A DNA stretch of 41,546 nt, from assembly GCA_020536535.1 (NCBI GenBank), contig JAHLWZ010000935.1, positions 1 through 41,546 on the forward strand. The letters are read 5' to 3'. Under the pieces are notes generated by a model. That model saw nothing but the letters and a program-made list of their open reading frames with translations. It ran no database searches and was not told where the DNA came from. The stretch comes from Pelomyxa schiedti (taxonomy: Eukaryota > Protista > Evosea). A program made the position numbers and the translations under genes. Every line of letters starts with the position of its first letter. Position 1 is the first letter of the stretch. Positions 1 to 17,730 of the stretch are shown in pieces.

Positions 1-1496
1 AGCTGTCACCAATTTGCTGAGTATGATGATACTCACCAAAAGTTGGTTTGTGATTGTATTGTTAGTTGAAAAGCTGCTTACTCCAAATGGAGAAGCAGTA
101 TTTGTGGCTTCTATACGGGGGGACAACGACACACAATCGATGCACGGAGGGATTGAGTCGTCAGTGTTCAGAAAGAACTTGTAATGGTGTTGGCCTGGTG
201 GCAGTGACAGTCGCAATGATGGTGTCGGGTCGGTGTACCACCGATGAAACATACGGTGTCGCTTCCAGTTGTCAAAACTACATGCCAGTTCGACGGTGAC
301 ACACCCGTAGGTGTACGCACTTGGAGCTCGAATATCCACCGAACGCATATTTGATCAAGACATTCGAAGTTTCTCGGGTTTCGAAGAAGACGGGTTTGTC
401 GCGAAACAGCCTGGGTTGTTTCGTCCAAGAAATGCTCCGTGTTACTGCAGTCGATCCCTTCGACGTTGTCAGCCTCCTTGAGGCTCTCGGGAGTCCGCGC
501 TGGAGGAAGGCGGCCCGCTGGGTGGTGCAGCCGACACCATGCTTGCAGCCCAGGGGCACGGGCCCACCGGGGAGGCTGGTGGCAATATTACGTTGACCAC
601 GCACTGCGTTGCGGCAACACGGAGGTAATTTTGTTGAGAAAAAAACCTAGATACTGTGTGTATGCTGCTCTTTAAGAATTTTCTCACAGTGGGCACACCA
701 TGCAGCTTGCGGCATGGATGCACAGTCAATTTACAATACAAACAAGAGAGCCATAGAATGGATTTTATGCCGCAGTGGCCAGACCCCATTTTACCCACAG
801 ACGACCTGTGGGCTCGCGCGATCATCGATGCAATCAAGAGGAAGTGGTATGACCTGCTTCTTGTTGTTGTGTCAAGGATGTATTCGAGAGACCCTGAATC
901 TCATCGGGGCGAGATGCAGAAGTGCCTTGAAACATTTTGCAAGGACAGCAGAACGGATATGATAGACTTAAAGAAACATTGACCTCGGAGCACTGGTACG
1001 GATGACGATGACGGATCGGGAAACGCTGAAATTCGTCTGCCACAGGTTCTGCTTTCAGATCTCAGGCATGAGCTGGATCTTATTCCCAAACTTTCAGGTG
1101 CGTGGCAGCAAATTGAGCTTTGCTCTCCTCCTCGACATCCCTCTTGATGTTGTCAGATACCTGGTGGACACCTGCCATATCCCAATGGCTAGCGGTCTGA
1201 TGAGGAGCCCTGGTGACCTTCATCCGAATGGCCCCTCTGCTATGCCCGTCTACAGAAGGCTTGAGAATCCGGAATTTGTCGAGAAACTGATTTGGTACGT
1301 GCACTCCTCACACCATTGCGCCGCGGTATCAGTTGTACCGTCCGTGGCACACTGGATACCGGACCCGAATCTGACCAAGATTTTGGGTGGCACAGCCACA
1401 TCGAGATTGAGAAATTTGCACGACACCGAGGAGTGTCTGAGCTGTACTCAATTTTGGACAGCGTACAACGAAGCCCGGTGCACACCAGCTGAATAA
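1..1496 (+). pseudogene. Degenerate or partial gene with ankyrin-like fragments
   Basis: Protein-like segments sit in different frames: ...YYVDHALRCGNTE before a gtaatt donor (~625), ORF 656-982, and ORF 1002-1496 containing DIPLDVVRYLVDTCHIP. ORF 656-982 (..MIDL) joins RNIDLGALVRMTMTDRET only through a 1-nt shift near 970. The 5' part is stop-interrupted and may be cut by the window edge. Confidence 0.35.
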
Positions 1497-1929
1497 AATA
1501 ATCAATTAAGGCACAGCCACACCCACACTCTGTGACGATGTGTTTTAATTTCCTGTAAAAAAAAAAACCCCTCCGCACGCGAAGATGCGGGTTGCGACGC
1601 CAGGCTACGGGTTCGTGCACACTCGTCGTGATGCAGATCGTGTACTGCCCCCCGTGAGCAGTCTTTTTCTTTCTTTGACTTGTACACCCTTTTTTTTTTT
1701 TTTTTTTTTGACACATTGAAATTAAACAAGGTGACGACCGCAGAAGGTGAGCCATCGACGTCAAATGGTCGCACGGAGCAAGTCACAGCTCAAGGAGGCG
1801 TGAAATCAGACATCTCAGTTTTTCGTGATGGATTCTTCTCGTGCATTAGGCGGCTTCCTTTCAAATGGGTATCATGATTTGGGCTCTTTTCCCCCTTTTT
1901 TTTTTCACACTGTTTAGCCCGAAGAAGTA

Positions 1930-4900
1930 ATGGTCGTTGTGTGTGACCAGAACTCTTTCATGCTCGAACTGGATTCACATAATTCACCGCCGATCGTGTA
2001 TGTGGACTCTCCTTCAGCGTCTATGCTTGCATCTCTTGCTGCGGGCTCCCCAAAGTTCTTTGAAACCATTTGCATGCTTGGAGCAACGCAAATGGCTGCC
2101 CTGATGACACATGGTTCCCCCAGAGTGGCCATGCACCTTGTAGCCTCTGCTTGGGAAGTTTTGGGTAAGCCAGTGCACGATCAAGTACTTGAGGGCATGC
2201 AAAAACTGTCTGGAGCGTGCCCCTTTGATGCAGGTCACGTGTGGGAGACTTTCCTTAGGAATGCTGCAGGGGTAACAGAAGCAGAGGTAACATTGCCCCA
2301 ATACCAATCCAACTCTAAAAAAAAACCTAAGAGGAGCTCCCAGGATGCTGCCTACGAGAAACGTGACAAGCTTGTCTCGTGGTTGCTTGCCAACCAGCTG
2401 ATAGAACTGCCTTACAACCACACTGCAATGTGCAATGCACTTCATAGTGATCTTTCAAGGAGACCAACCATGTGCCACTCTGTGCTTTCAAAATATGATG
2501 TTGCCTGTGAGCTAAGAAATGTTATGCGAGTTTCAAACTTCATTCGGGTAAGCCTCTCTTGTAGTCATATTTAAATCACATGACCGAAATAAGGAAGACT
2601 TAATCCCTAGAACAACTGCAGCCACCCCCATATTGCTTGTGGGTCGCGAGAGCCGTGCTTTTGGGAATCAAGCCTATCTTATGGCCTCCAGCAAACTCGT
2701 TCTCCCTGACGAAAACCTAATCTCCTCTGCCCAAACTCTTTTCAACATTTCGGATGGTGCAGAATTGAGGAAGGATCTCTTTTCAGTCATACCACCTAAT
2801 AACAACACTGCATTCAATCTGGTAGTTAAGCTGACTGATCTTTTGGTTCACCTTGGTCCAGGTGTGGGACGGCTGAAATCACTTGTTTCTAGGAAGGAAC
2901 CACACCCCTTGACACAGTACTGTGGTGTATTGCAGACCCTTCACCACCAGTTGGAGATTATACACACAGAATCCCGTATTATTCTAGATAAGGAAGTTTC
3001 ACGTGTGGTATGTGGCATTTCCCCACCTCTATGGCTTTACCTGACTGAATTCAGGTCCTGAGCTTGACAGATTATGCTTTTCGAACCTTGCAAGATTGTC
3101 AGCATCTCCAGGACTATCGTAACTCACTTATGTTACTGAAACAGAGGATGGACAGATATTCAGGGATCAGTGGTGATTTTGCTTCTGCAATTACCTCAGT
3201 GGAGGATTTTCTGCCCTTACAAAAGACAATAAGCCCGGCATTTAGTGTATTGTTGCAGCGCATTTCTCCCAATGCTGCTGAGAAATTCAAAGCTAATGAA
3301 ATTGAGGACAAACCAGAGCAAGAACCTGCCCTCAGAAAACTCGTACGTATTGGCGGGGATCGTGTGTACATGTCAGCATCATTTGAATGGATTTCAGAGG
3401 CAACTGATATTGTTGAAGCAGTACCCCTTTTCATATATGAACACACCGTGGAAAGGGAGGGCATCTCCAAGACTGAATTTCATGTAGACCAAGAGGGTCT
3501 GGAGGTTTGCTCATACTCCTTCCATTAGCCTCAATTTCCCTGGTTCACAAATCGCAGGCTACTGTGCGGCAGATGGCTCCTAACCTGGCCGAGAATATCA
3601 GACGAATGTTATCTTCACTCCATGTATCTCTTGCCCGTGAAGTTGTGTGCCATGCAGTTTCTGTGTCCCTGGAACAGTTGAAACTATTGGTCACTGAGAA
3701 TGGTCTTGACATAGACTCTGCTGTGTTGACTGCCTTAAAAGAATGCCGGCAGCGTGAAGTCTCTTTGGTTGCCCTATGGATTTCCATTCAATTTGAGAAG
3801 AGGGTGGAAGAGATTGAGGAGTACGTGGAACAACAGTGGTGCACAAATAACTATGTGGATCTTCTTTCTGCCACTCGTTCGGTTTTGGTGCAACCCAATG
3901 CCAAACTGCTGAGTCCATCTTACTCCACTGCTTGTGAAAAACTTGTTGCCCAAGTTTGCAATAGTGAAATATCCAATGATTCTACTGGAATATCTAAGTA
4001 CACTCCAATTCTGTGGAAGCGACAAAGACCACTACCTGCGTTTCACCTTCTTACCACAGAGGCACCTGGATTGATGGAGGCCTTCATACAAACAGTGCTA
4101 GAAGAACAAATGGCACTAGAAAACATTATTCTAGCCTATGGCCTTGAGTCAGAAGTAAAACTGCGCTCTGAGAAGTATGCAGGCAAGCTGCTGCACATCA
4201 GTCGTCACATAATATCTGAATTTGGCTATGAACCTCTTCTCAAGCAATACTTAGCAAAGCAGAACTGTTCTGAAGCAACCGCGTCCTTTACACTCATCCA
4301 AGAGCACACAAGAGTTCAAGAAGAGGTAGCAATACTAGCAGTTCTAGTTGATACTGCCTTTTCCCTCTCTGTAACAGACATGAACTCAGAAAACTGGATC
4401 ACAGAATGCATCTCTTGGATTGAAAGTGAGTGCACCAAGTTAAAATTACAGGAGCCCTCCTTGATGTTAGAGATAGAGTGCATTTCTTTACAACATGTTT
4501 TAGCTAATAACTTGGTGGATCCTGTCTTTTCTGAACTAAATGAAGCAAGTGGGAGCAAGCCTTCTGCATCTGCCGTGCGCATGGTGGTGATGCGGTCCCC
4601 TGAATTTTTAATGGAATTTAAAAGCAACATTTCATGGCAGTTACGGAGGCATCTTCTGCATTCTCTAGACAAAAGACATCCAGAGCTTTGTCTGGAGCGA
4701 CATGCTAAGCACTATATCCGGAACAGAACAGTGCTCACAAGAACATTAGCTGCACGTGAATTGATAAAGGAGAAAGGCCTTGCTCCACTGATGCTCTCTC
4801 CCCTCTATGCCTATGGTAGTGGAGTTGTGGATCAAAGAGATGGGCATGCAGTCCCTGTTGGACGCAGGAAGAGGTTTCTTCCATATGAAAATAATTAACA

Positions 4901-7900
4901 CTGAGCATCCTTGTGACCTCAAACAAGATATCACTTGATATATGCCCCAAGCAGAGTGAATCTAGGTAAGGGTGAACTGATGTCAGTGCAACAGTGGCCT
5001 CAGTGGGCTGGCGTGAGTGATCCCCTTGCTGCTTCTCATGCCAAGCACATGTATGAGCATATAAACTATCACCCCGTGATACACACAATTCGTGAAACTG
5101 AGAATCTAAAGGTGAGTGAAAATCAATGGACAGCATTGATTCGCGCCGTACGCAATTGTCAGGCCTTGTTTGTAGACAGAGAGGGAGTGGGAGATATAGA
5201 GCTACTGGAATACGAATATGCACAGAGGGATGGCCTAGCTGCAGCTTCTCGTAAGCTGAAGGAAAATTATTCGGCAGGGCCAACTGCTGGATATTGCATT
5301 CCAAAGGACTTACTTTTCAAAATGTTTGTGGTTACATTCCAGGATGAGTCTAAGCTTGAACAAATTGGTGTCTCTGCACATCTCCATGCTTCAACTCTCA
5401 GTACCCTTCATGATATATTGGACAGGAGACCAGACTTTCGTAGTGTTGCTGAATGGGAAAAATGGGCTGCAACACTTTTACAACCCGAGTCAATAAACTC
5501 CCGGCTCCTAGGAAGCAATTTGCAAACCTCTCATAGTATTCAGCGATTTAATTCTTGTCTTGGTAATACTTCCATTGTCTATCACTTACCCAAGCTGAGC
5601 AATTTGCTGCCTACTGTTGGTGTTCCCAACCCAAGGACACAACATGGACGTGATCTAGCCGCAGTTGTGTGGAGTTCTTGGGCAGAAAAGAAGATTAGTC
5701 TTGGCGGAGAACAAGTAAACCGATCACTTGTATTTGGATTTGTAAGAGGTATATTTCGTGCTGCAAGAATGGCTCGAAGTCTTAATCCATTGGTTCCCGT
5801 TGCTCAAGATGAGCGGCTTCATATCCATGTTTTTGGGACTTACAAAGGGGATGAAGATTATCCTGCACCACCTGATGTTCGGTTTGCAATGTCAATGCGT
5901 TTGTTCATGATACTCAGTGGTCATAGTCATGAAGTTGCTTTGTGCCTTGATGAAGAGGGTCAAGTTATAGCTCACCTACTCACACATGGCCTCAAGTTGC
6001 AGTCACAAAACGCAATGGATAAACGAGCTGCCAGCATGCTAGCTTCTCACTTTGTTGGAAAGAATGAATTTGATTCCAATGAAGACGCGAGGGTGATTGA
6101 GGCATTGATGAAAGAATTTCCACCAATGCCAAGCGTTGCAGACATTACCATTACGAGTGTACCTGGTGTCACCACGGAAGATTTACTTGGATTTAATGCT
6201 GAAACGAAGGCTCTTCTGTCCAATGACGCAAAAAGAGCCTTGGAGCTTCTGAAGACTTATGGAATTAATACTGAACAAATGAGGGCAAATGCTCGATTGC
6301 ACAAAAAGTTTCCAGAAGAATGGGCTCCTCTAAATAAACTCTCCACACAAAAAATACAGTTCCTCAAGGAAGAAGTGGGGTATTCAATACACCCCCTGGT
6401 TTTACAGTTACGTGGGCCTGGGTCAAATTTTAGGTTGGACTTACAGGCACAAGATATAGTCTTATTCTGCTGTCCCCATATGCAGGTTGGTGTGGAACTC
6501 TCCATGGTTTTTTTGTTTCTAATGGAGTTTGAAAGATGATGTCTCTTACTCCAACAGAGCTACGGGACCTTATGCTCCTTGGCAACCCTACAAGCGCCCT
6601 TGTTGCCCTCGACTTCGTAGTTCAGGGAAAAAAGAGGGTGTGGTGTGATAGAGATGTAATGAGCTGGTATGCTGCATGTCGGGGAATAGATGCGCAAGGG
6701 AATGAAATTGAAAATTGGGATGAAAGGGAAATTCGCGGACGTAGAGGCTCATATCTTGCGTTTGGTAAAGGCATATTCGATGTTGAATCATCCCTTGGCA
6801 TGATATTATATGATCGTGTTGGCTGCCAAGAAAAACGGGCCATAAAGCTTTACAAAGCCTTAGAGAATGTGGTAAATAGCAAGCCCCAAGCATACGAAGA
6901 ATTCCTGTCGATTTTCACAGAGGAATTCTCTATTGCCAAGTCCTCCTCTGTAAGACAAGAAATGGAGTGGGCATGTGACTATGAGCAACAAGTGATCCTC
7001 AAGGGCAGGTTTCAACAACGAGACACTATAATACGACAAGTACTAGAAAATATTGTGTATGGAATGCCGGCTAAAAGTTTTGGAGCTTTAGAGTGGCTCG
7101 CAACTGGTGGAATGTACCTCTTAAATGGCCTTCCTGCCTTAAAGCAGCAAAGGATTCTTGAGATTTGCTTTAAAGCTATCTCTGTTATGAATGGGAAGCC
7201 TCTGATAAGCAACTCTGATAGCGATAAAATATCGCACTTGATTCGCCCCCAGTCAATTGGAGCGTCATTCAAGTGGGCAGAGCAAAAAGGAGAAATGTTT
7301 TCCGTTAAAGCATCTGAACAAGTTAAAGAAACTGCCGTTGCGCGCCGACGGGCATTAATAGCTGCTAGTCGGATGCAAGCAACTGCCGAGCAGCTTTCCC
7401 AAGGCGTTTTATCTTGTTCTAACCTACATTTTCCTGAAACACCCCATCAACTACTACAATTTGCATTATCCACTACACGAGAAATTGTGGAATCCCTTAG
7501 GAATTCGTCACGTTCCTTTAGTGCAGCTTCACTTGTTGGAAAACTGTTGGGCCTGTGTCCAGCTGCAATTGACTCAATAACTGATCTTCTGCCACTTCCC
7601 CATAAAACATTGGTGAAAACATACACCAAACAGCTGACTGACGAATCTGGGTTAAAAATTGAAGTGTGGAAAAAGTTCAGTGGCACTTACGAGGACCAAG
7701 GACTTCTTTCAGAGATGTTTGATGCATGCAGCACCAGTTCTGAAAACGAAGAACTTGTGCTATCTCTATGTGAAATTCTCTACACGGCATTACTAATGTG
7801 GAAGACTTTACCCTTTCTCACCACAACCACTGACAATGTTGGGAATGTCCATCTTTGGCGGGCACTGGCCGAGTTTTTTGCTGAAACCATTGATGACCAT

Positions 7901-10900
7901 TACAGCGAGTACAATCCATGGTATTTGGACCATAAAAGATGCTCTCACTGGCACAGATTGTATGATACCTTGGGGTTTCTGAAGCCGGAAACCAGTGAAA
8001 TCCTTTACCAACTGGCCTGGAAGCATCATCGATATATGTATTTCTATGTGAGAACACTGATACTCGAGCACACTGCATTCAGTGCAATTCCGAGCACAGA
8101 GGCGGAGGTTTTACTTGGAGATGTGGTCTTAGGCAATTCACTGAGTGGTGAAGAAGACGTGGTCCGTGTGGTTGGCATTGGTGCTGGTCATCCTCCAGGC
8201 TATTTTGAAACACTGTGGCGAGCGTATAACCACCTCCGTGAGTTTGCCTTTATGGCAAATGATGGCTTTTCGTTGCCTGTTGTGGCTTGTGGGGTGGATC
8301 CCCAAACCCTAAATTGCACTTCACGTGTAAATCACGTGTTTCTATATCCTGTTGGTCGCACTCATATCTCAAGAGCTCTATCTGAAGGGCCAACAATGGG
8401 GGCCAATTTACTAGTAACCCGCGACGGTTGCATAAACTCTCTTCCTAAAAGTGAGGATCACCGCCCACTTGTGTGTATCAGTGACGCCCACACATGGCTC
8501 AGATTTGACGAGGCCGTGATGCTTCTTCATACTTCACGCAATATTACTCAGGAGCAAGCTCGAGACTACTTACTAGCATCGAACTATAACACAAGCAAGG
8601 GGGTAAGGTTTGCAATTACATTTTCCGACCCTGTGTGGGCTGGATCAGTATGCTGCTTCCACCATCATCGACTAGAAAAAGAGGTGTTCACAACCTGTGG
8701 CTATCCATCAACGGACAAATCCAGGGTACTTTTCGAATTGACATATAATAAATCACTCTATCCATCTATCTACACCGTGCCCGGGAGTGGAGTTGAACTT
8801 CCTCCAGAAATTGATTGGATGTTAGAGCATACAACGAAATTTGGGAGCAATGACGCAGAGGCAATTGTGGCAATTTCACAAAGGTTACGAGAATTTGCAC
8901 AGAGACATTTTTCAATCATCGCGAAAGGAGCTGCTGAATCCGGTGCAAGGAATTTACAAAGATTTGACCTTGTCAATCGTAACTCTGGTGTCGTTGACGA
9001 ACAACAACTTGTGGCTGCCAGTAAGTTTGTATACACTATAAGCAAGACTCAGAATGTAACCATTCAGAGAGCTATCATTACTACACCTTTTTCATGGATG
9101 GATTCCCAGGCAATTGAAAGGTTTGTGGAAAGACAACAAACAGAATGGGGTGCTGCAGTCCAATTACATGTTCACCCTAAAGATGCTGTATATGGTACCC
9201 TTCGTGTGATCATGTCGTGTGGAATGCCAAACAGTTGCAATCTACACGATCCGGCCAATTGGACCCCTTCACACATTCTTTATTTATGCAGCACCCAGGT
9301 GGCCACAAACGTGGGCCGCCAGGGTACTCTTGAAGTTCTAGACCCGAAGTAAGTTTTTTTTTTGTGTAGGTTGTTCTAAACCACCTCAAATAGGTTTATT
9401 CAACCTGCTTTCCGTGAATCTTTCATTACTGGACTGGTTGATGCCGCACGAAATTCTATGGTAGCTGTTTCACGGTTTGGGCACCATTACTGGCACAACT
9501 GCAGTACCGTTGAAGGCGTTACTCTACCGTCTTACCATGAGCTTCATCCTGAAGACCCCGAGTGTGATTCGAGTGGAATTCCCTACTGGTGGCCTCGATA
9601 CCTTATGCTGGATTTCTTACCGGAACCAATATTTGCTACACAAGATGGGAAAATACTTCATGATGTACAAATTCTGGATGTGTGCCCTGTATGCATTGCT
9701 GATTTTTTCCTTGGTCATTAACCTCTACCAGGGGAGGACCCTTATTGCAACTCAGACCCATTTTGTGATACAGACCCCTGGTTGTCCCTCCCCCTTTATT
9801 CCTCGCATTGCAGGTTTTCGATTTTGGCTACTTGAGCCAAATGTAGGTATAGGATTATGGCCAAATTATTGGAAGAGAGAGGTGTGCCTTGAACAAGAGA
9901 TGTGCGTCCAACAACATCGAGAAACGAACTGGGGGAATGTGGGTGTCAGTGACAGAATCGTTTTGTCAAACTTCTTGCTTGCTGGAGCAGCTTTCATGAA
10001 GTCACGGGGCATTTCCGTTCCTCCCTGTATCCCGGTTAGGAACTCGGAAAGCACATCATCTCAACAACTTTCCACAAATGTTCAAGACACAAAAGGTCTC
10101 TTCCTTTCAGCACTACAAGCCTTACATGAGCAACTACCTCATGTAAAAGAAGTAGGACCCCTCGAATTTAGTATCCTCCTGGTTGAACTGGCCTACCTTT
10201 ATTTCAAGGAACAGTTCTCTACACAGAAAATTAGCAATTCTCACACCCTCGAGCTCGTTAAGAGGTGGGTTGAGTCTGAGGAGGCAATCTCTCAAATTTT
10301 TGAACCTACAGTCTCAAAACTGCCAATTCCCATCGCATTAAGCAAAAGTGCTCTCTTGTCCTTCTTAGGAGACCCAGTCTACACATGCAGGATAGCAGAG
10401 ATTGTACTTGACCGGTTTAAGAGTGTACTTTTAACTCCCCCAACTGCACTCTTACCTCATTCATGTGAGTCTATGGGCCAAAGCACAACATTTTCCAAGC
10501 CCAACATTGTGGCGGTTGTTACTGGCAAAAGGTCACTTATGTCTCACCACCTTTTTCCCTGGTGCATGCGTCAGAGCACAGACACGTTAGTTATAGGCGT
10601 TCATACAGACTGGCTAACACCAGACGCAAAAGCATCCAGAATCATAACCTATGATCCTGCAAAGTCCCTCTTTATTGAACTGGCACTTGCGGCACCCCTT
10701 AGATTTACTCATACCTATGTTGTTGAGCTGCCTGCAAGCACAGAACTCATCGATCTCACGACGTTGTGCACCTGGTTTGATAGTGTGAATATAAAATCTA
10801 TCAACCCGTTATCCAGTGCCATAGAGCGTGCAGCTGATAAAACGTGGCTAATGAAGAACGCATCGTTGTTCAGCATTCCAGTCCCACTTTCTGGAGTAGT

Positions 10901-11590
10901 AAGTAAGGCTGCCGATATCGGCCGTGTAATACAAGAGCTTTCCTCATTATCTCGGAGCGAGGGAATTATCATCAAAGCCGCAAAGGGAACAACCGAGGGA
11001 GCAACTGTGCAATGGTTTGCTTCTACCGACGCGGCAAGTGCCTCCAACTACGCTGAGAGATTACTTTCACGAGGGGATATTATTATTAGCAAGTATGAAG
11101 GATCAGTAACCTATCAGGGCTGCCCGCTTGTTTTGCGCTTCAATGTTGCCTGCACCGGAACCGAGTGGCACACAACATGTTCTCCAGTCATTGGTGCCAA
11201 AGGGGAAAAGGTAGCAGTGCTGGGAAAAATTCCGGCTCAGCCAACAATGTCAACAGTACTGCGGAACTTGCAAGTCGCAAACACCGGCACAACAGTTTCA
11301 ATTACAGAGACGGAGTTCAACAGCCTTACCAACATCGCAAAGCTAACTGCTAACAAGGTATCTATCTACCCTAGCCCTATCACCCTTCCTAATTATGAGC
11401 ACAGATAAGCCTTCCACTTGTTGGTATTGATGTAGTTTTGGTTCACACCGAGGCAGGAATACAAGGACGCGTACTAGAAGCCAATGCCAGGCCCGGCAGC
11501 CTCATTTTCGCCGAGACAGTTCAGTTCACACCCCAAGGAATAGTATCTTCACCTGCACAAGCAATACCGCCATCATTTTTCCTGTCGTAG
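1930..11590 (+). CDS. Giant multidomain enzyme (~3091 aa): nucleotide-sugar dehydrogenase-like region plus two ATP-grasp domains
   Basis: Nine exons joined by phase-consistent GT-AG introns: 1930-2547, 2594-3007, 3055-3504, 3558-4873, 4928-6485, 6536-9348, 9394-9688, 9732-11357, 11405-11590 (9276 nt). Dehydrogenase motifs: YAPSRVNLG, ETENLKVSEN, AGPTAGYCIPKD, GTYKGD..DVR, DIVLFCCPH, YLAFGKG. ATP-grasp 1: IIAKGAAESGARN, LMLDFL, LLEPNVG. ATP-grasp 2: AADKTWL, IIIKAAKGTTEG, VGIDVV, VLEANARPG. Confidence 0.85.
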
Positions 11591-12188
11591 GTATTCCTTG
11601 AAACAAAAGAACTTCTCGTTTGCTGTTACTTGAGGTCGTGGAGATTGGCATAATGAGGGCAATTAGATTACTGCTTGTAAACACCCTCAGAACCCTTCAG
11701 CTTCAACAATGCTCAGTCTTTTTTTTAAAGACTCAAGCCTCTCTCCGTCTTTTTTATTTAAATTGAAAGAAGGGAGAGTACGAGCCCCTCCCAATCACAA
11801 AAATACGTGATCAAAGCGCATTAGTTGACGACCAGGAGCACGGTTGCTCATTAGTAAAAGGCGAATGACAAAAACGTTATGCGCCTGGCCCTGCGCCGGT
11901 GATTAGAAATTCTCTCCAACCCTTCGAATTTAAACAGGGTCCCACCGATTCGAATTATGGTTTGGATCCAAATTGGTTGCTACACGCGGAGAAAGAAGAG
12001 TTTTAAAGGGGTTTATTTATTGTTGACCCAAAAAAAACAACAAAGATTTTGACAATGGCATTTTGTGGCAAAGGGAATAGCTAATTCGGTGTTGGTGGGA
12101 GCTTGACATGTGGGAAGCCAGAACTCCTTACCAAGGAGTCCATGTCTCTAATTGTCTGATTCTAATTCTTTTGTGGAGTTGGAACACA

Positions 12189-13658
12189 CTACAAGAAGAA
12201 GGAGAACGTGTTCACCAGCTCCAGGTAAATGTAGGGAACGCAGATCTTGCACAACTCAATCCCAGAGGGAGCTTCATTTACAATTATGCTGTCACGCCTC
12301 ACGTGAAGTAAAAGCCCGGCCTCACCCCACACGCAGTTGCAACAGCCAACGTGGTCAACTGTCATCAACGCACTTGTGGGAGTGTTGCAGTCCCAGATTT
12401 CGAACGAGTATGGGTGAGACACGCAATACAACCTGTCACTCAGTCCGGAGATGACGACCTCGTAGTTGCACGTTGAGCAATAATGGGATGAATTGACCAC
12501 TGATGACGACGACTCTGGCAGCTGGAGCACAATGTTCTCGTTGTGGAATTTTACCAAAACTATGAATGTGCGCTGGTGCGATTCTGTCCGCAGAGTAACC
12601 AGCGACGAAAACTCGTAAAGCTGGTATTTCGCGCCAGACTTGACAAATCTTCCTGATGATGGGAGGTAGCACTTGGTGCAAGTGATCGGCTTCAGCGAAT
12701 TAGAAGACCACGTGTGCAGCAGGTTTAAAACAGTCAACTCAATGCAATTCACCTCGTTCCTGGAAGCAATAACTGCCTCATCATCATGCCAGTGAATGAA
12801 GAAGAATTCACATCTGCCAAACTGACCCGGCGCTGAAATTACCCGGCTTATGGGAGGTGGTATCCCGTCATTTTCCTCTGGGTCAGTAGTACATAGGTTC
12901 GCGATAATGGCCTCCCCCTTCGAGTATTTGTAGATAACAAGCCACTTGTGATTCACCTGATAGGAAGGTAATCCAAGAATCCTTCTTCCCTCCCACAGCA
13001 ATGCCCGATTCTTGGAATTTCTCCACCAGTCAACATTCACTTCACTTCCGGCGCGATCGCCGCACTCGTGTGGCTCCACTGGCTTCCTATCTCTTTGGTA
13101 GAACGCTTTCCCACAAAGGAATCTCTCGACCAGGTGAGCGCGGTTTATAGCAATCACCTCGCTAGCTTCGCACTTCTTCCACAGGCTCGTGAGCTTCCCC
13201 ATCACTCCCAGGGTCGCCATCGACACCCCAAACGTGATCAATGTTTCCTCGTAGTGGCAAGGCGGCACTGACATCACACTCACACAGAACAGCCTCACGC
13301 GGCGCCCGCCGCCGTTCCCATAATCGCCGTTGTCACCGTCGCCATCACCAGTGTCGTTCACCCAGTCCCACACCAGCCTCAGGGCCAGGCGAAAATTTTC
13401 ACTTGGCAGCCAGCCACACCTCGGGTGCGAAATCAAGCACAGAGCCGCGAATTGCAACTGCAAATCCAGAGTCGGTATCACTTTCTCCTCGGTTTCCTCA
13501 GGGTGGTAGCACCGCGCGTGGGGCGACAGAACGGCGCGCTCGTGCTTCGTCCGCTTCTTCCTCCTCCCATAATTGGCGTTGGCGCTCGGCGGCCGCTTCG
13601 CCCCCGCCTCGGTCGTCATTTTGGCCCCTGCGCCGGTGGCGTCCTTGTCGTACTCCAT
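12189..13658 (-). CDS. Intronless lineage-specific hypothetical protein (489 aa)
   Basis: Uninterrupted ORF from an ATG at 13658 preceded by an A-run. It has a basic NLS-like N-terminus (RRKKRTK), the motif LQFAALCLISHPRCG, and a beta-rich C-terminus (VNHKWLV, FEIWDCN). This resembles a Pelomyxa expanded family as I recall it. Confidence 0.75.
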   Translation of the reverse strand: MEYDKDATGAGAKMTTEAGAKRPPSANANYGRRKKRTKHERAVLSPHARCYHPEETEEKVIPTLDLQLQFAALCLISHPRCGWLPSENFRLALRLVWDWVNDTGDGDGDNGDYGNGGGRRVRLFCVSVMSVPPCHYEETLITFGVSMATLGVMGKLTSLWKKCEASEVIAINRAHLVERFLCGKAFYQRDRKPVEPHECGDRAGSEVNVDWWRNSKNRALLWEGRRILGLPSYQVNHKWLVIYKYSKGEAIIANLCTTDPEENDGIPPPISRVISAPGQFGRCEFFFIHWHDDEAVIASRNEVNCIELTVLNLLHTWSSNSLKPITCTKCYLPSSGRFVKSGAKYQLYEFSSLVTLRTESHQRTFIVLVKFHNENIVLQLPESSSSVVNSSHYCSTCNYEVVISGLSDRLYCVSHPYSFEIWDCNTPTSALMTVDHVGCCNCVWGEAGLLLHVRRDSIIVNEAPSGIELCKICVPYIYLELVNTFSFFL

Positions 13659-13814
13659 TTTTTTAACACAGTGCTGTAGTGACACATTTCCCCTTCTTTT
13701 TTTTTTTTTGTGTTGTCCAAGCGGCTCTTTTTTTTTTTTTGTGTCTCATCAGATTTGGAAGTGCACTGTGAGGGTTCTGTACAATTGAGAGGTTCTATCT
13801 ATCAGGTCACCATG

Positions 13815-15589: not shown

Positions 15590-17730
15590 TTAGTGACCGT
15601 CAAGTGCGGAAAAGTCATATAAACGGGACGGAGGACCAGGACAAATGCGCCTAACACACCAACCTTTGTGTTCAAGCCAATCACGAACACTGGAGGCATG
15701 TGATGTAAGGGTGTAAACGGCCACATTCCCTCCTGTTAGTCAGAGGTTAATATTGGTATAGATGTTGGGGTTTTTTTGGGGGGGTAAGTATCTACCCATT
15801 CCTGCAGCAGCAACTCTCATGGCGGCTATATTAGGGAAGTCAGCGGAAAGCTGTGAGGCAGCCTCGTCAATGTCAGGGATGCTTCTTTGGAAGGCACCAA
15901 CTTGATAGGCAAGGTTGGCTCCAGAAGCTGAATTTGGGTTGAGGGTGCAGTACAGTAATTATAGTATTGTATTTAAAAACGTTACTTAGCCACTGTTTCA
16001 AAACTGTGTCAGTGGGCTTTACATCCACCCTTGGTGAGGTTGCCCAGGGTGTTGGTGCGAAGGATTTTCTGTAGTCTATCAGTGCACGGTCTCCATCATG
16101 AGATAATGATACAAGATGCAAAACTTCAGGGAGGTTGTTGTGCTCCAGGGCTGAGAGGTATTGCAACCCTCTGAAGCACTTTATTTGCAGTCGGTATCAT
16201 AAAGAATTACCTCTCAATTTCTGAGAGACCATACAGTGCAATTTGTCGGAAGGTAATTTGTTCCTTTCAATTTAGGTTTTCAACAATGAAAAACAAAGAC
16301 AAAAAACCTCGGGGATGAGCTGGAGTAGGGAGTAAATTGTGCTAAACATTTGTGAGCGAGCTTCGCCACTTTGCACGTATTGCTGCCTGTCATCTTGCAA
16401 TAATGAGCATAACAGAGGCCTAGATAAAATAAGTGTCTCGAAAAGGAAAGAGAATGAGTCGACTTCTCATGGCGGCGCAAAGCAGTGAGGATAACCTCAA
16501 CTTGAGTCTGTGACAAACCGACTTTGGCAGTTTGATCTATGTTACTCAGTCCAGAAACAATCATCTCAGTGGCAGGGACATAGGATAATTGCATGGTCTT
16601 CAGGTGTTGGAAGGTTTTGAAGAGGTACTGGAAGATCATTTGTATATACCCGTTTTGCCCACTCCTGTATTAACGTCGCTGTTTCTCTCGGAATGCACAT
16701 GTGCTGGCATAGCCATGGCAACGCTTCTGAGGTTGAAAGCCGTGGGATCTTGAGTTGATAAGTTCAATGAGGGGACAAATGGACACACATTTGTATTAGC
16801 CATGAATACAGTTAAACTATTTGGTAGTGCCACTGTTCTCAAAAATTCTTCAGGGAAGGATCCAATTACAGCAACTTGCCCTTCTTGTGCAAATAACTGA
16901 GCTGCTTTATCTGCAGCCCCTGCTTTTTTCCCAAGGTAGTACTCACCAAAGTCGACCTACAAAAAGATGAATTACTTTTACAACTTTCTAGAGTCACCTC
17001 AAATGTGATTGTACCTGGGATAGCTGTTGCAATGTCAAACCCAAGTCAAGTAATGCATTGATGCCCACTGAAAGTGCAGTAGTGAGTGCAGAGGACGATG
17101 CCATCCCAACACACCAATGCAAAGCTAACGAACCACTGGAGCTAAAAAAGGCATTGATTCCTTTTCCTCCCTCAGCACAACGCTGACCAAGAGACGGGCA
17201 ACTCACATTGAGCAGATATGCCAATGCAGCTTTGCAGTAACTGTGCCAGTCATCAGGATTCCAGAAAACCCTGCCAGGCTCAGGCCTACCAACCATCAAC
17301 TATGTGATGTTAGTATGGTACAAAAAACTAAAAAGAATTCACCTCTTGTATGCCAACAGAGCCTGAAGGGAAAGATGCAGAGGAGTTGTAAAAGTGGAAC
17401 AAACCGTCCTGAGAGCACTGTACCACAGCCACAATGCACTCCTGAGTGGCAGCATTGATAGTGAATCCTCCCAAACCAGGGAAGTCAGTGTGTCCCTTGT
17501 TTAATTAGCATTGGAGTTAATTACCATTATTAGAACTAACAACTAAAAGCACAACGAACCATGAAAATTCTGTCCCTCCCAGGAGCCACAACCACAACAA
17601 CAGGCTCGTCAGGCACAAAGACGTCCAGAGGCACTCCCATAATGGCGTCGCACACGGCTGACAAAACACTGGATCCGTGCTCGTGAGTGTGCTTCTGCGT
17701 GGCCTCTTGCCACTGGCGCAACGACCTCAT
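15590..17730 (-). CDS. Divergent GHMP-family sugar kinase (galactokinase-like), multi-exon
   Basis: Spliced motifs in the expected order: VVAPGRDRIFM|GHTDFPGLGGFTINAA (cf. APGRVNLIGEHTDY), GMASSSAL (ATP-binding loop), GEYYLGKKAGAADK (cf. GxMDQ), MRVAAAGMGGNV (cf. ARxxGAGxGG), and C-terminal PGPPSRL. Stop at 15590-15592. Confidence 0.85.

What the first reader, a model, noticed from the sequence alone, without database searches (positions are those of the whole stretch)
1930..11590. Hidden ~3091-aa fusion: nucleotide-sugar dehydrogenase plus two ATP-grasp ligases, a candidate undescribed sugar-acid/amino-acid assembly enzyme
Seen: nine exons splice into one frame, with dehydrogenase motifs in the N-terminal half and two complete ATP-grasp motif sets at the C-terminus. 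Established: UDP-glucose/GDP-mannose dehydrogenases oxidise C6 of a nucleotide sugar to a carboxylate. ATP-grasp enzymes activate carboxylates and ligate them to amines, and TupA-like and sugar-transfer-associated ATP-grasps act in bacterial surface-polymer loci. Inference: one polypeptide could make an NDP-uronic acid and then add one or two amino acids or amines, for a glycocalyx or cyst-wall polymer or a small metabolite. I do not know of this architecture in any characterised eukaryotic protein.
Basis: partly seen in the sequence, partly recalled or inferred. Interest (0 to 1): 0.92.

Follow-up and report, generated by a model that had tools for sequence, protein, structure and literature searches.

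The report
Giant sugar-dehydrogenase plus double ATP-grasp enzyme
The amoeba Pelomyxa schiedti has a real gene of about 3,100-3,270 residues that joins a stretched nucleotide-sugar-dehydrogenase-like module to two different ATP-grasp ligase modules; it belongs to an uncharacterised giant-protein family shared by amoebozoans and several bacterial phyla, and probably makes an amino-acid- or amine-modified sugar acid.

Summary
The public model (KAH3744193.1, Pelo_14398, 3268 aa, 12 exons, window 1002-11590) adds two upstream exons that no homologue supports.

No exon hits Pfam or PDB by itself, but family profiles and AlphaFold models confirm all three domain calls:
- **Dehydrogenase-like module:** its profile matches UDP-ManNAc dehydrogenases (E 6e-14) and its model matches them structurally (Z 19-20). 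The Rossmann and central domains are spread over about 975 residues by insertions.
- **ATP-grasp 1:** a full fold match (Z 13-14, 263-280 residues aligned).
- **ATP-grasp 2:** 16 of 24 orthologues hit ATPgrasp_ST.

The catalytic Cys, Lys, Asn and Asp are invariant. However, GxGxxG is replaced by GRxSRAF and the PER glutamate by Ser, so redox activity is not assured.

The protein is neither hidden nor unique. Orthologues exist in Mastigamoeba, Clastostelium and Dictyostelia, and at least 115 bacterial species carry relatives (Omnitrophota, Latescibacterota, Gemmatimonadota, Methylococcaceae). Most long forms also fuse a galactokinase-like GHMP kinase. In Pelomyxa this kinase is a separate minus-strand gene at about 15620-17504.

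Bacterial neighbours (GHMP kinase, NTP-transferase, GT4) fit a nucleotide-sugar-acid amidation pathway. That chemistry is inferred, not shown. The scan had also noted this stretch under two sub-findings.

The parts
1002..11590 (+). Public gene model Pelo_14398 (KAH3744193.1 = P0001, 3268 aa, 12 exons, stop at 11588-11590).
   Evidence: P0001 is 100% identical to the 938-aa exon; it is named; exact exon map. Homology to the family begins only at P0001 residue ~236, so exons 1002-1445 and 1749-1868 are unverified.
2615..6628 (+). UDP-glucose/GDP-mannose-dehydrogenase-superfamily module (P0001 ~391-1660). Its Rossmann N-domain and central domain are interrupted by about 700 residues of helical and beta insertions.
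   Evidence: Family profile A4 vs PDB: 4r16 E 6.4e-14, 3g79 2.5e-13, Cap5O 5.3e-9. AlphaFold model pLDDT 85.8. VIA-align: CalS8 Z 19.7, 4r16 Z 19.4, hUGDH Z 18.3, model residues 7-984 against chain residues 8-303. The protein atlas lead also pointed to PF00984.
2642..2662 (+). GRESRAF loop after beta-1, at the place of the GxGxxG NAD fingerprint. The family motif is G-R-x-S-R-A-F-x-N-Q.
   Evidence: Column-by-column alignment of the 46 family rows that cover the loop; translation check; beta-1 sits at model residues 12-17.
4947..4958 (+). PSRV motif, equivalent to PERV of UDP-ManNAc/GalNAcA dehydrogenases. The Glu is replaced by an invariant Ser1118.
   Evidence: HMM alignment to 3g79; invariant columns.
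5109..5309 (+). Central catalytic domain: K1171 and N1175 (KVSEN) and G1231-Y-C1233-I-P-K1236-D1237 (catalytic Cys motif).
   Evidence: These columns are invariant in the 12-row full-length alignment and again in the 53-row A4 and 47-row A7 alignments, except D1237, which the and 41 lists do not show as invariant and one search shows as the majority residue only. Aligned to AE..K..EN and GGHCLPKD of 4r16; translation check.
5841..5882 (+). YKGD...DVR motif of the C-terminal NDP-binding domain.
   Evidence: Aligned to YKG..DDTR of 4r16 and Cap5O, as weak second domains. Y1415, K1416, D1426 and R1428 are invariant.
6629..8122 (+). All-helical middle domain of about 500 residues (P0001 ~1661-2158); function unknown.
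   Evidence: Secondary structure of model A residues 1-498, pLDDT mostly above 85. No PDB sequence match for profile A5. Its fold was not searched on its own.
8318..10004 (+). ATP-grasp module 1 (P0001 ~2224-2756), spanning introns 9350-9394 and 9689-9731. It belongs to no Pfam family.
   Evidence: Model pLDDT 88.3. All top-50 Foldseek hits are ATP-grasp fold enzymes (Ddl/VanA, LysX/ArgX, DcsG, PsnB, one tubulin-tyrosine-ligase chain), best E 4.6e-4. VIA wide: CPS Z 14.3, DcsG Z 13.9 (275 of 297 residues), LysX Z 13.2 (263 of 273), model range 565-1097. K2426, N2554, G2559, D2640, E2700 and N2702 are invariant.
10374..11587 (+). ATP-grasp module 2 (aligned segment P0001 2880-3268; the matched core is ~2944-3244), of ATPgrasp_ST / YheCD / DcsG type.
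   Evidence: Profile A3 vs PDB: DcsG 1.8e-3, cyanophycin synthase 2.3e-3, GshAB, RimK. 16 of 24 orthologues hit PF14397, 7 hit PF14398 and 5 hit RimK. P0001 itself hits NCBIfam DcsG at E 1.6e-4, residues 3009-3128. Invariant K, D, ExN, R and G. It is a separate gene just downstream in 41 of 81 bacterial loci.
11358..11404 (+). Last intron (47 nt, GT..AG), shown to be removed in RNA.
   Evidence: RNA contig joins 11256-11355 to 11403-11592; the joint can be read 2 nt further right, which matches.
9689..9731 (+). 43-nt intron that homology requires but that is retained in the only RNA-library contig covering it.
   Evidence: Contig 9534-10158 is collinear with the genome and carries a template-switch adapter at 9534. 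The frames before and after must be joined to match the family consensus.
15620..17504 (-). Multi-exon galactokinase-like GHMP kinase gene. It is the orthologue of the C-terminal module that is fused to the giant protein in Omnitrophota and Dictyostelia.
   Evidence: tblastn of the C-terminal parts of P0004, P0103, P0104, P0110 and P0007: E down to 3e-38, 42-68% identity in blocks. Pfam PF00288 and the GalK signature are found in the fused modules; NCBIfam gal_kin E 2e-10.

Best explanation
SHOWN. Window 1002/1930-11590 (+) is one intron-bearing Pelomyxa schiedti gene. Its product is a multidomain protein of about 3,100-3,270 aa. In order, it contains:
- a poorly conserved N-terminus;
- a module of the UDP-sugar 6-dehydrogenase superfamily, closest to UDP-ManNAc, NDP-GalNAcA and TDP-glucose dehydrogenases. 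Its Rossmann and central domains are split by large insertions. It keeps the catalytic Cys1233, Lys1171, Asn1175 and Lys1236/Asp1237, and the NDP-domain YKG..DxR motif;
- a helical domain of about 500 residues;
- an ATP-grasp module that belongs to no Pfam family;
- a second, unrelated ATP-grasp of the sugar-transfer-associated/YheCD type.

A fifth module, a galactokinase-like GHMP kinase, is fused in most long orthologues. In Pelomyxa it is a separate minus-strand gene 4 kb downstream.

The family is single-copy here. It is shared by Evosea amoebozoans and many bacteria, and the eukaryotic clade groups with long forms from Omnitrophota.

INFERRED mechanism.
1. A free sugar is phosphorylated at C1 by the GHMP kinase.
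2. It is converted to an NDP-sugar by a separate nucleotidyltransferase, which lies adjacent in some bacteria.
3. The dehydrogenase-like module oxidises C6 through a Cys1233 thiohemiacetal/thioester to give an NDP-uronic acid.
4. The two ATP-grasp modules activate carboxylates as acyl-phosphates and add one or two amines or amino acids.

The product would be an amidated sugar acid for a glycoconjugate or metabolite. The logic resembles Cj1441 plus the Cj1438 C-terminal domain of Campylobacter jejuni.
For: One gene:
- The 938-aa exon alone runs from the end of the dehydrogenase module into ATP-grasp 1.
- Bacterial homologues carry the same order in one uninterrupted ORF.
- A Clastostelium transcriptome ORF of 2797 aa spans the dehydrogenase module through ATP-grasp 1.
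- The last intron is spliced in RNA.

Domains:
- Dehydrogenase module: profile E 6e-14 and Z 19-20.
- ATP-grasp 1: Z 13-14 over whole chains, with every top hit an ATP-grasp.
- ATP-grasp 2.
- Catalytic and Mg/ATP residues are invariant.

Pathway context:
- GHMP kinase is fused in orthologues and lies next door here.
- In 81 bacterial loci the ATP-grasp 2 gene follows in 41; GHMP kinase genes occur in 13 plus 6, NTP_transferase in 6 and GT4 in 6.
- An Omnitrophota locus has three giant genes in tandem, carrying SIS, GHMP and PGM/PMM domains. A metagenome contig has DegT aminotransferases and PFK nearby.

Precedent: Cj1441 makes UDP-GlcA, and the TupA-like ATP-grasp domain of Cj1438 amidates its C6 carboxylate (PMC11800397, PMC11800379). 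Cj1441 itself matches the model at Z 16.8.
Against: - The NAD fingerprint GxGxxG is replaced throughout the family by G-R-x-S-R-A-F, with a non-glycine at the second position.
- The Glu of the PER motif corresponds to hUGDH Glu161 (from my knowledge of the enzyme; PDB 3khu is the Glu161Gln mutant holding a thiohemiacetal intermediate). Here it is an invariant Ser.
- No member reaches the Pfam or TIGRFAM cut-offs for the dehydrogenase.
- P0001 itself has no Pfam hit at all.
- No nucleotidyltransferase lies on this contig.
- No substrate, product or phenotype is known for any member.
- RNA coverage is fragmentary, and one intron is retained in the only contig that covers it.
Confidence: 0.5

Rival explanations
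1. The architecture is the same, but the dehydrogenase-like module is no longer an NAD-dependent oxidase. It would act as an NDP-sugar- or nucleotide-binding or scaffold module, or use another cofactor or chemistry. The two ATP-grasps would then ligate amino acids to, or phosphorylate, a substrate that is not a newly made uronic acid, for example a peptide, a protein tail or a sugar phosphate.
For: GxGxxG is replaced by GRxSRAF, with two conserved Arg, in every family row that covers the loop. The PER glutamate is replaced by Ser. Huge insertions sit inside the Rossmann domain. Structural neighbours of ATP-grasp 1 include protein and peptide ligases (LysX/ArgX, RimK, TTLL, PsnB) and inositol-phosphate kinases. 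Bacterial fusions and neighbours include PFK, HD, SIS and PGM/PMM, which act on sugar phosphates.
Against: The catalytic Cys, the Lys/Asn pair, Lys-Asp and the NDP-domain motif are invariant across very distant members, which is not expected of a dead enzyme. The replacement loop is itself strongly conserved, which suggests a ligand. GHMP kinase, NTP-transferase and GT4 neighbours fit nucleotide-sugar chemistry.
Confidence: 0.3
2. Gene-model artefact: the region holds two or more adjacent genes (a dehydrogenase-like gene and ATP-grasp genes) that the reader and the public annotation wrongly spliced into one.
For: No RNA contig bridges the modules, and the 43-nt intron 9689-9731 is retained in the one contig that covers it. 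In many bacteria ATP-grasp 2 is a separate gene. The two upstream exons of the public model have no homologue support.
Against: One uninterrupted 938-aa exon joins the end of the dehydrogenase module to most of ATP-grasp 1. The dehydrogenase-through-ATP-grasp 1 core is a single ORF in all bacterial members. ATP-grasp 2 is fused in Mastigamoeba, Dictyostelia and Omnitrophota. All introns are 43-54 nt and preserve the frame and the homology. The intron inside ATP-grasp 2 is spliced in RNA.
Confidence: 0.03
3. The contig is bacterial contamination of a single-cell amoeba assembly, for example from an Omnitrophota-like cell.
For: The closest non-amoebozoan relatives are Omnitrophota proteins at 44-46% identity. 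The runs of the study that holds this DNA include single-cell libraries.
Against: There are eleven GT..AG introns, one confirmed in RNA. The nearest relative is Mastigamoeba at 58-63% identity, within a supported amoebozoan clade. The rest of the contig has short-exon eukaryotic gene structure.
Confidence: 0.01

Closest known systems
UDP-N-acetyl-D-mannosamine / NDP-GalNAcA / TDP-glucose dehydrogenases (P. horikoshii 4r16, M. mazei 3g79, S. aureus Cap5O, CalS8) of the UDP-glucose/GDP-mannose dehydrogenase superfamily
   Same: Shared fold of the N-terminal Rossmann and central domains (Z 18-20, about 250 residues at 3.1-3.6 A). Shared sequence blocks around AE..K..EN, GG.C.PKD and YKG..D.R (E down to 6e-14). 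The catalytic Cys, Lys, Asn and Asp are kept.
   Different: The roughly 300-residue N-terminal and central domains are spread over about 975 residues by insertions. GxGxxG is replaced by GRxSRAF. PER is replaced by PSR. The module is embedded in a protein of more than 3000 aa. It scores below every curated family cut-off.
Campylobacter jejuni Cj1441 (UDP-glucose dehydrogenase) with the C-terminal TupA-like ATP-grasp amidoligase domain of Cj1438 (glucuronamide of the HS:2 capsule)
   Same: The proposed logic is the same: a UGDH-type enzyme makes the C6 carboxylate and an ATP-grasp amidates it (PMC11800397, PMC11800379). Cj1441 matches the dehydrogenase-module model at Z 16.8.
   Different: In Campylobacter these are separate proteins, the ATP-grasp is of the TupA-like family, and it is fused to a GT2. 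Here there are two non-TupA ATP-grasps: PF14305 is not among the families hit. They are fused to the dehydrogenase. No activity has been shown.
Sugar-transfer-associated ATP-grasp (PF14397) and YheC/D-like ATP-grasp (PF14398); D-cycloserine synthetase DcsG
   Same: Orthologues of ATP-grasp 2 hit PF14397 (16 of 24) and PF14398 (7 of 24). DcsG is the best PDB and NCBIfam match. The D...ExN.RPG Mg/ATP motif is kept.
   Different: All hits are below the gathering score, and the Pelomyxa segment itself hits no Pfam model. The module is part of a giant fusion.
Galactokinase / fucokinase-type GHMP sugar-1-kinases
   Same: The fused C-terminal modules, and the neighbouring Pelomyxa gene, carry the GHMP motif and the GalK signature. 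A stand-alone bacterial neighbour matches the fucokinase half of FKP at E 3e-43.
   Different: The module is divergent and below cut-offs. The Pelomyxa gene is not found by the Pfam six-frame scan. In Pelomyxa it is split off onto the opposite strand.

Membership tests
UDP-glucose/GDP-mannose dehydrogenase superfamily (PF03721/PF00984/PF03720, TIGR03026) | N-terminal Rossmann domain plus central helical domain fold | tested here: met
   VIA-align Z 19.7 (CalS8), 19.4 (4r16) and 18.3 (hUGDH); about 250 residues aligned at 3.1-3.6 A; model 7-984 against chain 8-303.
UDP-glucose/GDP-mannose dehydrogenase superfamily (PF03721/PF00984/PF03720, TIGR03026) | Catalytic Cys in GG.C.PKD, and the Lys/Asn pair of the central helix | tested here: met
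   C1233, K1236, K1171 and N1175 are invariant in the 12-, 47- and 53-row alignments; D1237 is invariant only in the 12-row one. All aligned to the motifs of 4r16 and 3g79.
UDP-glucose/GDP-mannose dehydrogenase superfamily (PF03721/PF00984/PF03720, TIGR03026) | C-terminal NDP-sugar-binding Rossmann domain | tested here: inconclusive
   Weak second and third HMM domains to 4r16 and Cap5O, with YKG..D.R invariant. One structural alignment reaches chain residue 379, but at rmsd 16.4. The model was cut at residue 1584, before the domain ends.
UDP-glucose/GDP-mannose dehydrogenase superfamily (PF03721/PF00984/PF03720, TIGR03026) | GxGxxG dinucleotide-binding fingerprint after beta-1 | tested here: not met
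   G-R-x-S-R-A-F-x-N-Q in the 46 family rows that cover the loop. The second Gly position holds E, L, M, I, F or A.
UDP-glucose/GDP-mannose dehydrogenase superfamily (PF03721/PF00984/PF03720, TIGR03026) | Glu of the (N)PE / PER motif | tested here: not met
   PSRV, with invariant Ser1118, aligned to PERV of 3g79.
UDP-glucose/GDP-mannose dehydrogenase superfamily (PF03721/PF00984/PF03720, TIGR03026) | Score above the curated family cut-off | tested here: not met
   P0001 has no Pfam hit. Homologues score 18 bits against a 25.4-bit cut-off for PF00984 and 60 bits against 189.8 for TIGR03026. It is therefore homologous but not a standard member.
UDP-glucose/GDP-mannose dehydrogenase superfamily (PF03721/PF00984/PF03720, TIGR03026) | NAD+-dependent two-fold oxidation of an NDP-sugar | not testable with these tools
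   Needs an enzyme assay.
ATP-grasp superfamily (module 1, P0001 ~2224-2756) | Three-subdomain ATP-grasp fold | tested here: met
   Z 13-14 covering nearly whole chains (DcsG 275 of 297, LysX 263 of 273, ArgX 270 of 281). All 50 best Foldseek hits are ATP-grasp fold enzymes.
ATP-grasp superfamily (module 1, P0001 ~2224-2756) | ATP-binding Lys and the Mg-binding acidic residue plus E-x-N | tested here: inconclusive
   K2426, D2640, E2700 and N2702 are invariant and occur in the expected order. Their placement in the active site was not checked on coordinates.
ATP-grasp superfamily (module 1, P0001 ~2224-2756) | Sequence match to a described ATP-grasp family | tested here: not met
   No Pfam hit. 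The profile of 62 sequences finds nothing in the PDB at E<=1. hhalign finds no similarity to module 2.
Sugar-transfer-associated ATP-grasp PF14397 (module 2, aligned segment P0001 2880-3268) | Profile match | tested here: inconclusive
   16 of 24 orthologous segments hit PF14397 (best E 2.2e-6), but the Pelomyxa segment does not. P0001 hits NCBIfam DcsG at 1.6e-4. The profile hits DcsG, cyanophycin synthase, GshAB and RimK at 2e-3 to 0.9.
TupA-like ATP-grasp amidoligase (Cj1438C type) | Match to PF14305 | tested here: not met
   PF14305 is not among the families hit by any of the 24 module-2 segments at E<=0.05, nor by whole proteins.
GHMP kinase, galactokinase-like (neighbour gene 15620-17504, minus strand) | Orthology to the fused GHMP module; GHMP motif II | tested here: met
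   tblastn E down to 3e-38 to the C-terminal modules of P0103, P0004, P0104 and P0110. These modules carry PF00288 and the GalK signature. A G-M-A-S-S-S-A-L motif is seen in the exon ORF. The Pfam six-frame scan did not pick the gene up.

The most novel reading that the evidence does not exclude
The family is an undescribed megasynthase. Evosea amoebae either inherited it from Omnitrophota-like bacteria or exchanged it with them. It would carry out, on one or two polypeptides, a whole route from free sugar to a doubly amidated (amino-acid-decorated) nucleotide sugar acid.

Its dehydrogenase module would use a new cofactor-binding loop (GRxSRAF). Because the hydrolytic Glu is replaced by Ser, it might hand over or hold its thioester intermediate differently from all known UGDH-type enzymes. 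The product would be a so far unknown building block of amoebozoan walls, spore coats or cysts.
Probability: 0.2. Interest if true: 0.8.

Novelty: new variant of a known kind. Interest (0 to 1): 0.6.

Why it matters
The three enzyme folds are ordinary. Their combination is not: a protein of more than 3000 aa whose dehydrogenase Rossmann domain is split by hundreds of residues. I found no description of it in the literature, and most of the protein belongs to no Pfam family.

The family is conserved from methanotrophs that can be grown in culture (Methyloglobulus morosus, Methylotetracoccus oryzae) to Dictyostelium relatives that can be genetically manipulated, so its product can be found experimentally.

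It is also a clean case of a gene of about 9 kb shared between bacteria (Omnitrophota-type) and a eukaryotic supergroup. It shows fusion and fission of the same modules (ATP-grasp 2, GHMP kinase, PFK) in different lineages, which ties those modules together functionally.

If the chemistry is as inferred, it would reveal a new sugar-acid amide in amoebozoan surface or wall biology.

Tried and rejected
**Searches that found nothing**
- Exon-by-exon Pfam scans at E up to 10 and PDB sequence searches of the three largest exons.
- Profiles of ATP-grasp 1 (A2), the middle region (A5) and the first 580 residues of the dehydrogenase module with its insertions (A6) against the PDB. They gave nothing, or only coiled-coil noise.
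- hhalign between the two ATP-grasp profiles: no similarity, so they are not a tandem duplication.
- Foldseek on the 1200-residue dehydrogenase model. It gave only weak local hits (best E 0.036). The fold became clear only with VIA-align.
- Literature searches. Locus tags gave 0 papers. ATP-grasp + GHMP + UGDH + Dictyostelium gave 0. Two preprints on giant Omnitrophota genes do not mention GHMP, UDP-glucose or amoebae.

**Hypotheses tested**
- Paralogues: the gene is single-copy in the genome.
- A nucleotidyltransferase on this contig: none; hits lie only on other contigs.
- Other ORFs of the window, including the 497-aa minus-strand ORF at 12189-13682: no Pfam hit and no relation to bacterial neighbour genes.
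- Direction of transfer. The free tree nests amoebozoans among Omnitrophota-type sequences. However, the AU test does not reject a monophyletic Omnitrophota-type group (p 0.078), so the direction is left open.
- Contamination and gene-model artefact were considered and rejected (see the rival explanations).

**Not done**
Whole-protein work used the database's own protein P0001, as returned.

Full report
**What the window is**

The window is a whole 41,546-bp contig of the anaerobic amoeba Pelomyxa schiedti. The largest exon of the finding (6536-9349, 938 aa) is 100% identical to residues 1630-2567 of a 3268-aa database protein, P0001. This protein is KAH3744193.1, "hypothetical protein Pelo_14398 [Pelomyxa schiedti]", seen on one contig of 41,546 bases.

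Exons were searched one by one by reference. For whole-protein work I used P0001 as the search returned it.

**Check of the observation**

The + strand carries a chain of long ORFs from 1930 to 11408. Exact mapping of P0001 gives 12 exons: 1002-1445, 1749-1868, 1918-2286, 2332-2547, 2594-3010, 3058-3504, 3558-4874, 4929-6485, 6536-9349, 9395-9688, 9732-11357 and 11405-11587. Ten introns are 43-54 nt and one is 303 nt.

Family homology begins only at P0001 residue ~236. The two upstream exons are thus unverified, and the start at 1930 remains possible.

RNA-library contigs from the same study lie on three places:
- 7040-7471.
- 9534-10158. This contig is collinear with the genome, so it retains the 43-nt intron 9689-9731. 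It carries a template-switch adapter at its end.
- 11256-11355 joined to 11403-11592. This is a GT..AG joint that equals the last annotated intron.

So the gene is transcribed and spliced at its 3' end. No contig bridges the modules.

The fusion rests on other evidence:
- The 938-aa exon itself runs from the end of the dehydrogenase module into ATP-grasp 1.
- All bacterial homologues have the same order in one ORF.
- A Clastostelium transcriptome ORF of 2797 aa spans the dehydrogenase module through ATP-grasp 1.

**Domains: single sequences find nothing**

No exon, and not even the whole of P0001, hits any Pfam family. The three largest exons find nothing in the PDB by sequence. A language-model look-alike search gave only a weak lead to the UDPG_MGDP_dh central domain (score 0.81). 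The picture changes once homologues are used.

**Dehydrogenase-like module**

A profile of 53 homologous segments (A4, P0001 960-1660) hits the following:
- UDP-ManNAcA dehydrogenase 4r16, E 6.4e-14
- NDP-GalNAcA dehydrogenase 3g79, E 2.5e-13
- Cap5O, E 5.3e-9
- CalS8 and several UDP-glucose and GDP-mannose dehydrogenases

The aligned blocks are PERV (here PSRV), AE..K..EN, GG.C.PKD and, weakly, YKG..D.R.

An AlphaFold model of P0001 385-1584 (47-sequence alignment, pLDDT 85.8, pTM 0.85) aligns to CalS8 at Z 19.7, to 4r16 at Z 19.4, to human UGDH at Z 18.3 and to Cj1441 at Z 16.8. About 250 residues align at 3.1-3.6 A. Model residues 7-984 correspond to chain residues about 8-303.

The Rossmann NAD domain and the central domain are therefore present, but spread over about 975 residues by helical and beta insertions. 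This confirms the "stretched" dehydrogenase of the scan's sub-finding.

Invariant residues include K1171, N1175, G1231, C1233, P1235, K1236, D1237, Y1415, K1416, D1426 and R1428. Most are invariant again in the larger alignments; D1237 is not.

Two defining features are not met in any member:
- The GxGxxG fingerprint is replaced by G-R-x-S-R-A-F-x-N-Q (GRESRAF at 2642-2662).
- The PER glutamate is replaced by an invariant Ser (PSRV at 4947-4958).

The module is homologous to these dehydrogenases and keeps their nucleophile machinery. Its cofactor use and full two-step oxidation are open questions.

**ATP-grasp 1**

A profile of 62 segments finds nothing in the PDB. The model of P0001 1660-2760 (pLDDT 88.3, pTM 0.82) gives the answer.

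All 50 best Foldseek hits are ATP-grasp fold enzymes. The exhaustive VIA search gives the following:
- carbamoyl-phosphate synthetase, Z 14.3
- DcsG, Z 13.9 (275 of 297 residues)
- VanA, Z 13.7
- LysX, Z 13.2 (263 of 273 residues)
- ArgX, RimK, TTLL, BacD and others

All of these fall on model residues 565-1097, which is P0001 2224-2756 and window 8318-10004.

K2426, N2554, G2559, D2640, E2700 and N2702 are invariant.

Residues 1660-2158 form a confident all-helical domain. I could not search it on its own.

**ATP-grasp 2**

- The profile of 24 segments hits only ATP-grasp enzymes at the top: DcsG 1.8e-3, cyanophycin synthase 2.3e-3, GshAB and RimK.
- 16 of the 24 orthologous segments hit PF14397 (sugar-transfer-associated ATP-grasp). 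Seven hit YheC/D and five hit RimK. The Pelomyxa segment itself hits none.
- P0001 hits the NCBIfam DcsG model at E 1.6e-4.
- The invariant K, D, E-x-N-x-R-P-G set is present.

The two ATP-grasps are unrelated at profile level.

**The family and a fifth module**

Representatives at 50% identity give 92 clusters, many of 2,400-6,000 aa. Named members come from:
- Mastigamoeba (58% identity), Clastostelium, Heterostelium, Polysphondylium, Acytostelium, Synstelium and two Dictyostelium species
- Omnitrophota and Latescibacterota, with a distant Lokiarchaeota member

A scan of one genome per species confirmed 115 relatives in bacterial genomes and kept 80 loci. These also include Gemmatimonadota, Armatimonadota and Methylococcaceae. 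Among them are the cultured Methyloglobulus morosus KoM1 and Methylotetracoccus oryzae C50C1.

Most long forms carry a C-terminal GHMP kinase with a galactokinase signature. In Pelomyxa that module is a separate multi-exon gene on the minus strand at about 15620-17504 (tblastn E down to 3e-38). This is a gene fission with linkage kept. It confirms and explains the scan's neighbouring note on a GHMP kinase.

In the short bacterial forms, ATP-grasp 2 is the next gene downstream in 41 of 81 loci. Other recurrent neighbours are:
- GHMP kinases, in 13 plus 6 loci; one matches the fucokinase half of FKP at E 3e-43
- NTP_transferase, in 6 loci
- GT4 glycosyltransferases, in 6 loci
- a LarA-N-like protein, in 9 loci
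- two-component and sigma-54 regulators

One Omnitrophota locus has three giant genes in a row, carrying SIS/DUF4954, the family member, and GHMP plus PGM/PMM. Another contig has two DegT aminotransferases and a PFK. PFK is also fused to the N-terminus of P0021.

**Evolution**

The gene is single-copy in this genome.

In a tree of the 1,690-column core, Pelomyxa plus Mastigamoeba (support 100) join Clastostelium plus Dictyostelia in one clade (99). This clade groups with Omnitrophota-type long forms (97 and 100). The Latescibacterota, Gemmatimonadota and Methylococcaceae short forms lie on the other side. An ATP-grasp-1 tree with 98 rows agrees.

The free tree nests the eukaryotes inside Omnitrophota-type sequences. 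However, an AU test does not reject Omnitrophota-type monophyly (p 0.078).

An ancient transfer between an Omnitrophota-like lineage and the ancestor of Evosea amoebozoans is likely. Its direction is not settled. Both trees are quick searches.

**How it most likely works**

Shown: the architecture, the conserved catalytic residues, and the module associations.

Inferred: a route running sugar-1-kinase, nucleotidyltransferase, C6 oxidation on Cys1233, then one or two ATP-grasp amidations. This is analogous to Cj1441 plus the TupA-like ATP-grasp domain of Cj1438. Together those make the glucuronamide of the C. jejuni capsule (PMC11800397, PMC11800379).

The main rival is that the dehydrogenase-like module, lacking GxGxxG and the PER glutamate, does something other than NAD-dependent oxidation. 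The ATP-grasps would then act on another substrate.

Contamination and gene-model artefact are effectively excluded.

**Verdict**

The pathway is plausible and now better grounded, but unproven.

The protein is an already annotated hypothetical protein. It belongs to an uncharacterised, widespread family, so it is not a unique hidden gene. I rate it a new variant of known kinds, with interest 0.6.

Noticed in passing
window 15620-17504 (-): A multi-exon galactokinase-like GHMP kinase gene. It is the orthologue of the module fused to the C-terminus of the giant protein in Omnitrophota and Dictyostelia, so this is a gene fission that kept linkage, on the opposite strand.
   Followed up: yes
window 9689-9731: The only RNA-library contig that covers this 43-nt intron (9534-10158) retains it and starts with a template-switch adapter at 9534. 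It could be an unspliced transcript, an internal start, or DNA carried over into the single-cell library.
   Followed up: partly
window 1002-1868: The two upstream exons of the public model (P0001 residues 1-188) have no counterpart in any homologue, not even Mastigamoeba. The true start codon is uncertain (1002 or 1930).
   Followed up: partly
window 12189-13685 (-): A 498-aa uninterrupted ORF lies between the giant gene and the GHMP gene. It has no Pfam hit and no similarity to the family or to bacterial neighbour genes.
   Followed up: partly
window 11600-41546: Apart from that ORF, the rest of the contig has only ORFs under 200 aa (many short exons). The giant gene, by contrast, has exons of up to 938 codons and introns of 43-54 nt. 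This intron-poor structure fits a bacterial origin but does not prove it.
   Followed up: no
L002 1-32483 (Omnitrophota JAMWCF010000002.1): Three giant genes lie in tandem, of more than 3351, 4160 and more than 4584 aa. The outer two carry SIS/DUF4954 and GHMP plus PGM/PMM domains. This looks like a sugar-phosphate pathway written in giant proteins.
   Followed up: partly
P0021 residues 852-2303; P0003 residues 520-870; P0130: Bacterial members carry extra fused modules. P0021 has PFK, HD, HEAT repeats and CsrA at its N-terminus. P0003 has a WD40 propeller. P0130 has a PIG-L-type deacetylase domain, according to precomputed Pfam.
   Followed up: partly
P0112-P0114 (metagenome proteins): Three unnamed metagenomic proteins of 2,077-2,659 aa fall inside the amoebozoan clade in the ATP-grasp-1 tree. 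They probably come from uncultured eukaryotes (amoebozoans) in metagenomes.
   Followed up: no
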